A DNA stretch of 63,984 nt, counting the filler, from Octopus bimaculoides (Eukaryota), in the NCBI RefSeq assembly GCF_001194135.2. It is 8 parts of 7 records of this genome, joined end to end, with 100 filler letters (N's around TTAATTAATTAA, not from the genome) between each part and the next. Parts side by side here need not be neighbours in the genome. Positions count along the whole stretch, not along the records: positions 9,575 to 22,106 come from NC_068985.1; 7 more parts are not named here. One strand, 5' to 3'. The stretch's first letter is position 1; every line of letters starts with the position of its first letter. Of this stretch, positions 12,974 to 13,208 are shown piece by piece. The translations under genes were made by a program, and so were the position numbers. The notes beneath the pieces were generated by a model that saw only the letters and a program-made list of their open reading frames with translations, did not search any database and was not told where the DNA came from.

Positions 12974-13208
12974 TTATTTCTTTATTGCCCACAAGGGGCT
13001 AAACATAGAGGAGACAAACAAGGACAGACAAAGGAATTAATTCGATTGCATCGACTCCAGAGCGTAACTAGTATTTAATTTATCGACCCCGAAAGGATGA
13101 GAAGCAAAGTCGACCTCAGCGGAATTTGAACTTAGATCGTAATGGTAGACAAAATACCGCTAAGCATTTCGCCCGGCGTACTAACGTTTCTGTTAGCTCG
13201 CCGCCTTT
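12974..13208 (-). mobile_element. tRNA-derived SINE, family 'S2' (tail type a), inserted into an S1 copy with an 18-bp TSD
   Basis: Head AAGGCGGCGAGCT...GTTAG, B-box-like AAGTTCAAATTCC, central CTTTGCTTCTCATCCTTTCGGGGTCGATAAATT and tail CCCCTTGTGGGCAATAAAGAAAT. Flanked by CGGGC(A/T)TCTTTAAGTTTC at 12956-12973 and 13215-13232. Confidence 0.9.

What the first reader, a model, noticed from the sequence alone, without database searches (positions are those of the whole stretch)
12974..13032. The S2 SINE and the ORF1-only elements share the same ~55-nt 3' tail
Seen on +: S2 TTTCTTTATTGCCCACAAGGGGCTAAACATAGAGGAGACAAACAAGGACAGACAA (also 60470-60525 on the other strand). Compare unit C TTTCTTTATTTGGCACTACGGCCACAACACAGAGGAGACACTACAAGGATAGGCA (14/15 match in AACA.AGAGGAGACA), units B and D (exact ACAAGGACAGACAA), and unit A (ATTTCTTTATTGC). 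Known: SINEs share 3' tails with the LINE whose RT copies them; L1-type RTs are usually relaxed and need only poly(A). Inference: an unseen autonomous L1/Tx1-like LINE recognises a specific tail and drives two passengers, a tRNA SINE and an ORF1-only element.
Basis: partly seen in the sequence, partly recalled or inferred. Interest (0 to 1): 0.7.

Follow-up and report, generated by a model that had tools for sequence, protein, structure and literature searches.

The report
Octopus SINE tail with conserved hairpin
The flagged 55 bases are the real 3' end of a roughly 235-base mobile element (a SINE) in an octopus genome; the end carries a small conserved hairpin and looks like a handle for a copying enzyme, but the enzyme-encoding partner element was not found, so this is an ordinary example of a well-known arrangement.

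Summary
Observation confirmed. The quoted string lies at 12977-13031 (+). It is the 3'-terminal module (12975-13032) of a ~240-nt SINE, 'S2', on the minus strand (13214->12975).

- **Discrete insertion.** S2 sits inside the tail of an older CORE-type SINE, flanked by a 19-bp target-site duplication (18/19).
- **More copies.** Five further full copies in O. vulgaris, O. sinensis and O. bimaculoides all end exactly in ...TAAAGAAATA, with 13-19-bp duplications. One has an empty orthologous site in O. bimaculoides.
- **Swappable tail.** The same head and body occur with at least two other tails.
- **Conserved hairpin.** All tails share a 4-bp hairpin with a (C)UUGU loop plus an A-rich end, with compensatory stem changes (92% paired vs 63% shuffled, 0/500).

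Interpretation only partly supported. No LINE carrying this tail was found in ~140 kb of octopus DNA. The L1/Tx1 assignment is untested. There is no poly(A), and tRNA models do not recognise the head. A different repeat in the window does share its tail with a CR1-like LINE, so tail-sharing pairs exist in this genome.

Verdict: a known kind of system, low to moderate interest.

The parts
12975..13214 (-). S2 SINE, full copy (~240 nt): head with box-A/B-like motifs, Deu/Nin-like body ending in the hairpin GTCGATGCAATCGA, then the 3' tail
   Evidence: Boundaries set by the 19-bp target-site duplication and by the in-silico empty site. It aligns over its full length with five other copies; the consensus is 232 nt and mean pairwise identity is 85%.
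12975..13032 (-). S2 3' tail module (sense TTTGTCTGTCCTTGTTTGTCTCCTCTATGTTTAGCCCCTTGTGGGCAATAAAGAAATA); this is the finding
Evidence: Homology with same-body, other-tail copies stops at this point. The tail is 89% conserved among copies against 84% for the rest of the element.
12987..12999 (-). Hairpin GCCC-CUUGU-GGGC
   Evidence: It appears in the MFE fold and in the RNAalifold consensus. Covariation: 15 sequences, 91.7% of cells paired vs 62.6% shuffled, 0/500.
12975..12986 (-). A-rich terminus AATAAAGAAATA (no poly(A), no microsatellite)
   Evidence: All six copies end ...TAAAGAAATA directly before the target-site duplication.
13215..13233 (-). 5' copy of the target-site duplication, AGAAACTTAAAGAAGCCCG
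   Evidence: 18/19 identical to 12956-12974.
12956..12974 (-). 3' copy of the target-site duplication, AGAAACTTAAAGATGCCCG
13215..13373 (-). Older CORE-type SINE ('S1') that received the S2 insertion in its 3' end. Its remaining tail and TG/TA microsatellite continue at 12928-12955.
   Evidence: The joined flanks align colinearly with intact copies at window 15685-15880(-) and L026 19340-19530. Repeat family D11.
12597..12672 (-). Duplicate of the S2 tail, target-site duplication and microsatellite junction, cut off by the N gap at 12674-12850
   Evidence: 76/76 identical, flank included (D12).
13711..13900 (+). Related SINE with the same head and body but a different tail (UGGU-UUUGU-ACUA hairpin variant)
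   Evidence: 70% identity to S2 positions 25-187, with no similarity after that (sequence).

Best explanation
**What it is.** The 55 nt is the 3'-terminal module of a ~235-nt non-autonomous retrotransposon (SINE 'S2', of the type octopus repeat annotations call tRNA-Deu). It lies on the minus strand.

**Shown here**
- This copy retrotransposed into the tail of an older CORE-type SINE and made a 19-bp target-site duplication.
- Other copies in three Octopus genomes end at exactly the same base (...TAAAGAAATA) with 13-19-bp duplications.
- At least one insertion is younger than the vulgaris/bimaculoides split.
- The tail is an exchangeable module. It consists of a pyrimidine-rich stretch, a 4-bp G+C hairpin with a CUUGU loop, and a 12-nt A-rich end.
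- The hairpin and A-rich architecture, but not the stem sequence, is kept in the alternative tails carried on the same SINE body.

**Inferred**
- The module is the cis-signal that lets the reverse transcriptase of a partner LINE bind the Pol III transcript and prime target-primed reverse transcription (stringent-type recognition).
- The module was copied from that LINE's 3' UTR.
- The LINE and its clade are unknown.
For: - **Boundaries and insertion.** Sequence and coordinates; target-site duplication and restored empty site.
- **Independent copies.** Five more full copies with precise ends and target-site duplications.
- **Empty orthologous site.** L036 ~4509 against the filled L031 573-805.
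- **Module swapping.**
- **Hairpin.** Covariation, RNAalifold, and its specificity: the motif scan hits only SINE ends in ~190 kb.
- **Tail conservation.** The tail is more conserved than the body.
- **Similarity to unit C.**
- **Tail after non-S2 sequence.** Two cases, both starting at the module boundary.
- **Precedent in the same genome.** The 'third family' repeat shares ~45 nt of 3' tail with a CR1-like LINE (score 44 vs 11±2).
- **Literature.** Mollusc SINE tails of 35-61 bp at 72-95% identity to LINE 3' ends, shared across superfamilies (PMC11481361). Octopus has active RTE, Dong-R4, CR1 and L1-Tx1 LINEs (PMC13282606).
Against: - No LINE 3' end with this tail was seen in ~140 kb of unique octopus DNA.
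- The hairpin is only 4 bp, and the fold is not thermodynamically unusual (z = -1.1).
- The compensatory changes amount to only about 2-3 independent lineage events, and I chose the structure after seeing the sequences.
- Stringent-type tails usually end in short tandem repeats; this one ends in a unique A-rich sequence.
- The two tail-only copies could simply be 5'-truncated SINE insertions.
- The Pol III/tRNA nature of the head was not confirmed.
Confidence: 0.65

Rival explanations
1. One reading: the partner is an L1/Tx1-clade LINE with a specific (stringent) tail. It drives both the SINE and ORF1-only (HAL1-like) deletion derivatives.
For: - Target-site duplications of 13-19 bp and an A-rich terminus fit L1-like target-primed reverse transcription.
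- Three of six duplications begin AGAAA/GAAAC, which resembles the element's own end.
- O. vulgaris has 13 recently active L1-Tx1 families (PMC13282606).
- A stringent L1 lineage with SINE partners exists in monocots (PMC3472496).
Against: - There is no poly(A).
- No TT/AAAA-type target is evident in the six sites.
- AATAAA is not conserved: most O. vulgaris/O. sinensis copies read AGTAAA.
- No L1/Tx1 fragment was seen in the sampled loci.
- The ORF1 evidence lies outside the piece and could not be examined.
- A hairpin followed by a short A-rich tail is equally typical of CR1/L2-type 3' ends, as in the CR1-like LINE of L030.
Confidence: 0.2
2. There is no shared LINE tail. The 'other elements with the same tail' are unrelated sequences that happen to lie upstream of 5'-truncated insertions of S2-type SINEs, or chimeras made by template switching.
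For: - 5'-truncated SINE copies occur: L026 7330-7500, and the head-truncated copy in L035 21980-22165.
- The L035 tail-only copy sits next to a MITE-like inverted repeat, not next to a coding sequence.
- The comp2533 tail lies in opposite orientation to the adjacent LINE fragment.
Against: - Both tail-only copies begin at the same module boundary rather than at random truncation points.
- Unit C is 24% diverged and has a different but still paired stem, so it is a separate lineage rather than a truncated S2.
Confidence: 0.25
3. The tail is a SINE-lineage invention rather than LINE-derived. Mobilisation uses only the A-rich end (relaxed recognition), and the hairpin serves Pol III transcript stability, processing or termination.
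For: - The hairpin and A-rich module is seen only on this SINE superfamily in ~190 kb.
- In bivalves, 16 of 21 SINE tail clusters have no identifiable LINE homology (PMC11481361).
Against: - The precise, identical 3' ends without a variable A-tail are unlike relaxed, poly(A)-primed SINEs.
- Wholesale tail swapping on a constant body is the pattern expected from partner switching (PMC11481361).
Confidence: 0.15
4. The similarity is a chance match in AT-rich, low-complexity DNA.
For: The region is flanked by microsatellites, and the window is full of simple repeats that give spurious Rfam miRNA hits.
Against: - Score 28 vs a maximum of 19 in 40 controls of 60 kb, and vs 14 elsewhere in the piece.
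- The tail recurs at 82-93% identity in three Octopus genomes.
Confidence: 0.01

Closest known systems
Mollusc HCD-SINEs with 'mosaic' LINE-derived tails (bivalve Deu, CORE, V and Meta SINEs partnered with CR1, CR1-Zenon, L2 and Nimb; PMC11481361, PMC4824008, PMC4758252)
   Same: Head-body-tail architecture. A conserved body combined with alternative tails. Tail homologies of ~35-61 bp at 72-95% identity, shared between different element families.
   Different: The partner LINE is not identified here. The host is an octopus. The tail ends in a unique A-rich sequence rather than in tandem repeats.
Stringent SINE/LINE pairs such as eel UnaSINE1/UnaL2 and zebrafish L2-type LINEs, whose 3' stem-loop is recognised by ORF2 protein (PMC4176376; Ohshima and Okada reviews cited in PMC4824008)
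   Same: A 3'-terminal stem-loop whose pairing, not its sequence, is conserved. Precise 3' ends.
   Different: The stem is only 4 bp. No terminal (TGTAA)n-type repeats. Recognition has not been tested.
Octopus SINEs OK/OR1/OR2 (Ohshima and Okada 1994) and the tRNA-Core / tRNA-Deu classes of current octopus repeat annotations (PMC8967140, PMC13282606)
   Same: Same host genus. The CORE-type element that S2 inserted into, and S2 itself, fit these two dominant octopus SINE classes.
   Different: I could not compare with the published consensus sequences, which are not held. The identity of S2 with a named family is not established.
Internally deleted LINE derivatives: mammalian HAL1 (ORF1-only L1; from my own knowledge) and lepidopteran SIDEs with CR1 partners (cited in PMC11481361)
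   Same: This is the known kind for an 'ORF1-only element' that keeps its parent LINE's 3' tail and co-exists with SINEs using the same tail.
Stringent L1 lineage of monocots with SINE partners (PMC3472496)
   Same: A precedent for an L1-clade LINE that needs a specific structured 3' end.
   Different: It is a plant lineage. Nothing here shows that the octopus partner is L1/Tx1.

Membership tests
SINE (short non-autonomous non-LTR retrotransposon) | Short dispersed repeat with defined ends and target-site duplications | tested here: met
   Six copies of ~233-240 nt with identical 3' ends and 13-19-bp target-site duplications.
SINE (short non-autonomous non-LTR retrotransposon) | Presence/absence at orthologous sites (evidence of transposition) | tested here: met
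   L031 (O. sinensis) and L032 (O. vulgaris) are filled. L036 (O. bimaculoides) is empty and carries a single GGTTGTCTGTGGAAGAC.
SINE (short non-autonomous non-LTR retrotransposon) | No coding capacity | tested here: met
   No ORF longer than 52 aa across the element.
tRNA-derived SINE | 5' head recognisable as tRNA-derived, with box A and box B | tested here: inconclusive
   ARAGORN finds 0 genes in the window, in the loci and on the 232-nt consensus, even at relaxed thresholds. Rfam gives no tRNA hit at E<=10. Only motif-level resemblance was seen by eye: GAGTTCAAATTCC vs GGTTCGANNCC, and GCTGGCAGAA / TTAGCGGTA vs box A.
Deu/Nin (tRNA-Deu) SINE superfamily | Central Deu/Nin conserved domain | not tested
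   No reference Deu/Nin sequence was available. The only support is indirect: octopus SINEs are annotated mainly as tRNA-Deu and tRNA-Core (PMC8967140), and RepeatMasker rows of O. vulgaris transcripts hit AmnSINE2, OegopsSINE and SepiaSINE.
Stringent-type SINE/LINE pair with a common 3' tail | An autonomous LINE whose 3' end is homologous to the SINE tail | tested here: inconclusive
   None was found in ~140 kb of unique octopus DNA. RTE-BovB, CR1-like and RTE-like 3' ends differ from the S2 tail. The sample is too small to exclude a LINE present at a few copies per Mb or fewer.
Stringent-type SINE/LINE pair with a common 3' tail | Conserved 3' secondary structure | tested here: met
   The 4-bp hairpin is kept through changes on both sides in all four pairs: 91.7% of cells paired vs 62.6% shuffled, 0/500, and slid controls reach at most 58%. 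RNAalifold predicts the same hairpin.
Stringent-type SINE/LINE pair with a common 3' tail | Tail also carried by other element types (LINE or its derivatives) | tested here: inconclusive
   The quoted unit C string is significantly similar. Two tail-only copies follow non-S2 upstream sequence. None of these is linked to an ORF.
L1-type (relaxed, poly(A)-dependent) mobilisation | 3' poly(A) or variable A-tail | tested here: not met
   All copies end in the fixed sequence TAAAGAAATA, followed directly by the target-site duplication.
L1-type (relaxed, poly(A)-dependent) mobilisation | Target-site duplications of ~7-20 bp and a TT/AAAA-like target | tested here: inconclusive
   Duplication lengths of 13-19 bp fit. 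The targets are GAC|AGAAAC, CAA|GGTTAT, CAT|GAAAC, TAC|AGAAAT, (TA)n and GCC|GTTGTC, with no clear TT/AAAA among six sites.

The most novel reading that the evidence does not exclude
An octopus L1/Tx1-clade LINE has evolved stringent recognition of a minimal 3' signal: a 4-bp stem, a CUUGU loop and a 12-nt A-rich end. It mobilises both a very abundant Deu-type SINE and ORF1-only deletion derivatives. That would be an animal counterpart of the monocot stringent L1, active after the O. vulgaris/O. bimaculoides split.
Probability: 0.12. Interest if true: 0.45.

Novelty: new member of a known kind. Interest (0 to 1): 0.25.

Why it matters
SINEs make up more than a tenth of octopus genomes, and LINE activity in the octopus brain has been reported. 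Knowing which LINE drives which SINE would help date and interpret those expansions.

This finding defines the exact 3' end, the target-site duplications and a conserved hairpin of one abundant, recently active SINE. That gives a precise probe for finding its partner LINE.

The principle itself, a tail shared between a SINE and a LINE with module swapping, is long established, including in molluscs. The result refines annotation rather than changing understanding.

Tried and rejected
1. **Wrong boundary, corrected.** I first read the 19 nt after AAAGAAATA as a terminal motif shared by S2 and the CORE-type SINE. It is in fact the target-site duplication created when S2 inserted into that SINE's tail.
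2. **DNA scans.** An 18-mer of the tail was searched in viral and metagenome collections. Only chance matches of 18-20 nt came back.
3. **Protein search with the antisense ORF across the tail.** No candidates. An exact look-up of a 121-aa window ORF found nothing on record.
4. **Protein search with an RTE C-terminal piece padded with X.** I miscounted the padding, so the scored region held 79 real residues. It returned two non-octopus hits. This used the last homologue search without reaching octopus LINEs.
5. **Literature search for sequence strings.** Irrelevant hits only. The Albertin 2015 paper is not held. No paper naming the partner LINE was found.
6. **Transcriptome supplement.** The stored 400 kb holds one diverged tail-like copy, comp2533. 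The RepeatMasker table covers other transcripts.
7. **tRNA and Rfam checks.** ARAGORN and Rfam find no tRNA in the heads. The Rfam miRNA hits are microsatellite noise.
8. **CR1-like LINE of L030 as donor of the S2 tail.** Rejected: score 10, equal to the shuffle mean.
9. **Orthologous empty site for the L035 tail-only copy.** Not clean: O. vulgaris has a ~1-kb deletion between inverted SINEs at that position.

**Transparency note.** It served only as a handle to fetch octopus DNA.

Full report
**What the piece is.** Positions 9575-22106 are non-coding, gap-ridden, microsatellite-rich DNA with no convincing genes. Several short interspersed repeats dominate it. S2-family copies recur at 82-93% identity in O. 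vulgaris, O. sinensis and O. bimaculoides loci. The N gaps beside (TA)n runs look like those of the O. bimaculoides assembly. The piece is therefore Octopus DNA; the exact species is my inference.

**Checking the observation.**
- The quoted 55-mer lies at 12977-13031 on the + strand.
- The element it belongs to is oriented on the minus strand. Its sense strand runs from a head (GGCGGCGAGCT...) near 13214, through a body, to ...TTTAGCCCCTTGTGGGCAATAAAGAAATA, ending at 12975.
- I first took the next 19 nt for part of the element, because they match the 3' ends of a second SINE family. That was wrong.
- The same 19 nt (18/19) also precede the S2 head (13233-13215 against 12974-12956). Removing S2 and one copy in silico restores a colinear CORE-type SINE, as shown by alignment with intact copies in the window and in O. 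vulgaris.
- The second occurrence at 12597-12672 is identical through the target-site duplication and the flanking microsatellite, and it abuts an N gap. It is the same junction duplicated, not a second insertion.

| Comparison | Local score |
|---|---|
| S2 tail vs unit C (42/55 identical) | 28 |
| Pairwise shuffles (5000) | 6.8±1.4, maximum 15 |
| Best hit in 60-kb Markov sequences, both strands (40) | 14.7±1.3, maximum 19 |
| Best hit elsewhere in the real piece | 14 |

Chance is excluded.

**Getting more octopus DNA.**
- The DNA collections hold no octopus sequence: scans gave only chance 18-mers.
- A protein search with an ORF across the SINE found nothing.
- I reached annotated Octopus genomes through exact protein look-ups.
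- This gave loci L026-L036, about 140 kb of unique sequence from three species.

**Anatomy and mobility of S2.** Five further full-length copies were found.

| Copy | Target-site duplication |
|---|---|
| L031 ~573-805 | 17 bp (16/17) |
| L031 19368->19133 | inside a (TA)n run |
| L033 11869->11637 | ~16-20 bp |
| L030 5375->5143 | 13 bp (12/13) |
| L035 ~15465-15698 | 13 bp (11/13) |

- All five end at exactly ...TAAAGAAATA.
- The first copy has an empty orthologous site in O. bimaculoides: L036 ~4509 carries a single GGTTGTCTGTGGAAGAC. The family was therefore active after the vulgaris/bimaculoides split.
- A six-copy consensus is 232 nt. Mean pairwise identity is 85%, with 89% for the tail and 84% for the rest.
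- The head has box-B-like (GAGTTCAAATTCC) and box-A-like motifs. Neither ARAGORN nor Rfam recognises a tRNA, even on the consensus. 'tRNA SINE' therefore rests on published class labels (tRNA-Deu; PMC8967140, PMC13282606), not on a test here.

**The tail is a module with a conserved hairpin.**
- The same head and body occur with other tails. One is ...CTGGCCCCCTCCCCAAAATTTCGGGCCTTGTGCCTAGAGTAGAAAAGGAT (L026, L027, L028, L033, L035). Another is ...TTGCTGGCATTGTGCTAAAATTTTGAAACC (window 13711-13900 and transcript comp3721).
- All tails share one architecture: TTT, a 4-bp stem, a (C)UUGU loop, the complementary stem, then about 12 A/G-rich bases.
- On 15 sequences, 91.7% of cells pair against 62.6% in shuffles (0/500). 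All four pairs show changes on both sides, and slid controls reach at most 58%. The 9-sequence set gives the same picture.
- RNAalifold independently predicts this hairpin.
- A strict motif scan finds the hairpin only at the ends of these SINEs in ~190 kb.
- Caveats: the stem is short; the single-sequence fold is unremarkable (z = -1.1); the compensatory changes reflect perhaps two or three lineage events; and I defined the structure after seeing the sequences.

**Looking for the partner LINE.**
- Tail searches by BLAST and by the hairpin scan found no LINE 3' end carrying this module.
- Three kinds of LINE fragment are present in the sample, and none matches the S2 tail (score 10, equal to the shuffle mean):
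  - an RTE-BovB 3' end that stops in (GATA)n (L026 23248-23560);
  - a CR1-like 3' half (L030 3250-4385) whose 3' UTR ends ...TGCCCCAGCATGGCCACAGCTTGTGAGCTGAAAC(TAAAA)n;
  - RTE-like fragments in L033.
- Two copies of the tail follow non-S2 sequence, and both begin at the module boundary.
  - L035 21919-21979 sits behind a MITE-like inverted repeat.
  - The 5' end of O. vulgaris transcript comp2533 sits next to, but in opposite orientation to, what I recognise by eye as a restriction-like-endonuclease (RLE) type LINE C-terminal fragment (not run against Pfam).
  - These hint that the tail is not confined to S2, but neither links it to an ORF.
- With roughly 40 S2 copies per Mb, a partner LINE ten to a hundred times rarer would need more than 1 Mb of sequence to be met by chance. 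I could not fetch that much.

**A positive control from the same genome.** Another abundant repeat has its sense on the minus strand at window 11060-11260, 15170-15400 and 15455-15690, and also at L026 7270-7345. It shares ~45 nt of 3' end, again a hairpin followed by an A-rich repeat, with the CR1-like LINE of L030. The score is 44 against 11±2 for the L026 copy and 24 against 11±1.8 for window 15455-15690; the other two window copies scored no better than shuffles (17 and 11). Tail-sharing SINE/LINE pairs therefore do operate in octopus. This makes the same reading of the S2 tail plausible by analogy.

**Mechanism.**
- Shown: S2 is a mobile ~235-nt element with a precise 3' end and long target-site duplications. 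Its tail is modular and carries a structurally conserved hairpin.
- Inferred: the tail is the recognition and priming signal for a partner LINE's reverse transcriptase, and it was copied from that LINE's 3' UTR.
- The clade is open. Target-site duplications of 13-19 bp and the A-rich end fit L1/Tx1-like elements, and O. vulgaris has active L1-Tx1 families (PMC13282606).
- Against that, there is no poly(A), and AATAAA is not conserved (AGTAAA in most copies). No TT/AAAA target is evident. A hairpin plus a short A-rich tail is equally CR1/L2-like.

**Comparison with what is known, and verdict.**
- Shared SINE/LINE tails, tail swapping on conserved bodies ('mosaic' evolution) and 35-61-bp tail homologies at 72-95% identity are documented in molluscs (PMC11481361, PMC4824008, PMC4758252).
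- Internally deleted LINE derivatives that keep the parental tail (HAL1, SIDEs) are known.
- A stringent L1 with SINE partners is known in plants (PMC3472496).
- The finding is real and the observation accurate, but it is a new member of a known kind. Interest 0.25.

Noticed in passing
window 11060-11260, 15170-15400, 15455-15690 (sense on minus strand); L026 7270-7345(-); L030 3250-4385(+): A third abundant repeat shares its ~45-nt 3' end (...CCAGCATGGCCRCAG-hairpin-GAAAC plus an A-rich repeat) with a CR1-like LINE found in O. vulgaris. The score is 44 vs shuffles 11±2 for the L026 copy and 24 vs 11±1.8 for window 15455-15690; the other two window copies are at shuffle level. This is a genuine SINE/LINE tail pair. 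Its body also contains the CTGGGGTCGAT..TCGACT motif seen in S2.
   Followed up: partly
window 12597-12672 vs 12928-13003, gap 12674-12850: A 76-nt stretch (S2 tail, target-site duplication and microsatellite) is duplicated exactly on both sides of an N gap, with different outer flanks. This is probably assembly redundancy at the gap.
   Followed up: partly
window 15875-15904; L026 23540-23570: A (GATA)n run sits directly upstream of a CORE-type SINE head, next to a gap. In O. vulgaris an RTE-BovB copy ends ...RLRLSG* followed by (GATA)n. This may be an RTE 3' end lost in the gap.
   Followed up: no
window 12174-12243 and 12506-12575: Two 70-nt stretches are 74% alike (core AATAATTAAG.TG.CTAGACGCAATTT), spaced 332 nt apart. 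An unidentified repeat.
   Followed up: no
window 11715-11860 and 18058-18113: A long (GAA)n/(GAC)n triplet run, and four tandem copies of a 14-nt unit (GGCTGTTTCGGCAC).
   Followed up: no
window 18940-19200, 20120-20760, 21499-21567 and others: Rfam 'miRNA' matches (mir-297, mir-3149, mir-1277 and others) all lie on TA/TG microsatellites and fall far below the gathering scores. They are noise.
   Followed up: yes
O. vulgaris transcript comp2533_c0_seq1 (PMC9115989, supplement 3): The transcript starts with an antisense, diverged copy of the S2-type tail. It then holds, in the opposite orientation, the C-terminal CCHC...RPDI part of what I recognise by eye as a restriction-like-endonuclease (RLE) type LINE, possibly Dong/R4-like. 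This was not run against Pfam.
   Followed up: partly
L035 21039-22074 vs L030 33705-33727: About 1 kb lying between two inverted SINE copies in O. bimaculoides is missing in O. vulgaris. This looks like a deletion between inverted repeats.
   Followed up: partly
L035 20223-20624 and L030 ~30960-31296: A 133-aa ORF (...FVEATPHRELVHRFRKILKDTKLNRKVIEKLGRSIRSV...) lies just downstream of the MCCC2 gene and is conserved at ~91% DNA identity between O. bimaculoides and O. vulgaris. It looks transposon-derived and was not identified.
   Followed up: no
L030 24858-26214: A long tandem array produces 390-430-aa repetitive open frames (...GIDHIQMLLFMCHRHRG...) inside an MCCC2 intron of O. vulgaris. Probably a satellite, not a gene.
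   Followed up: no
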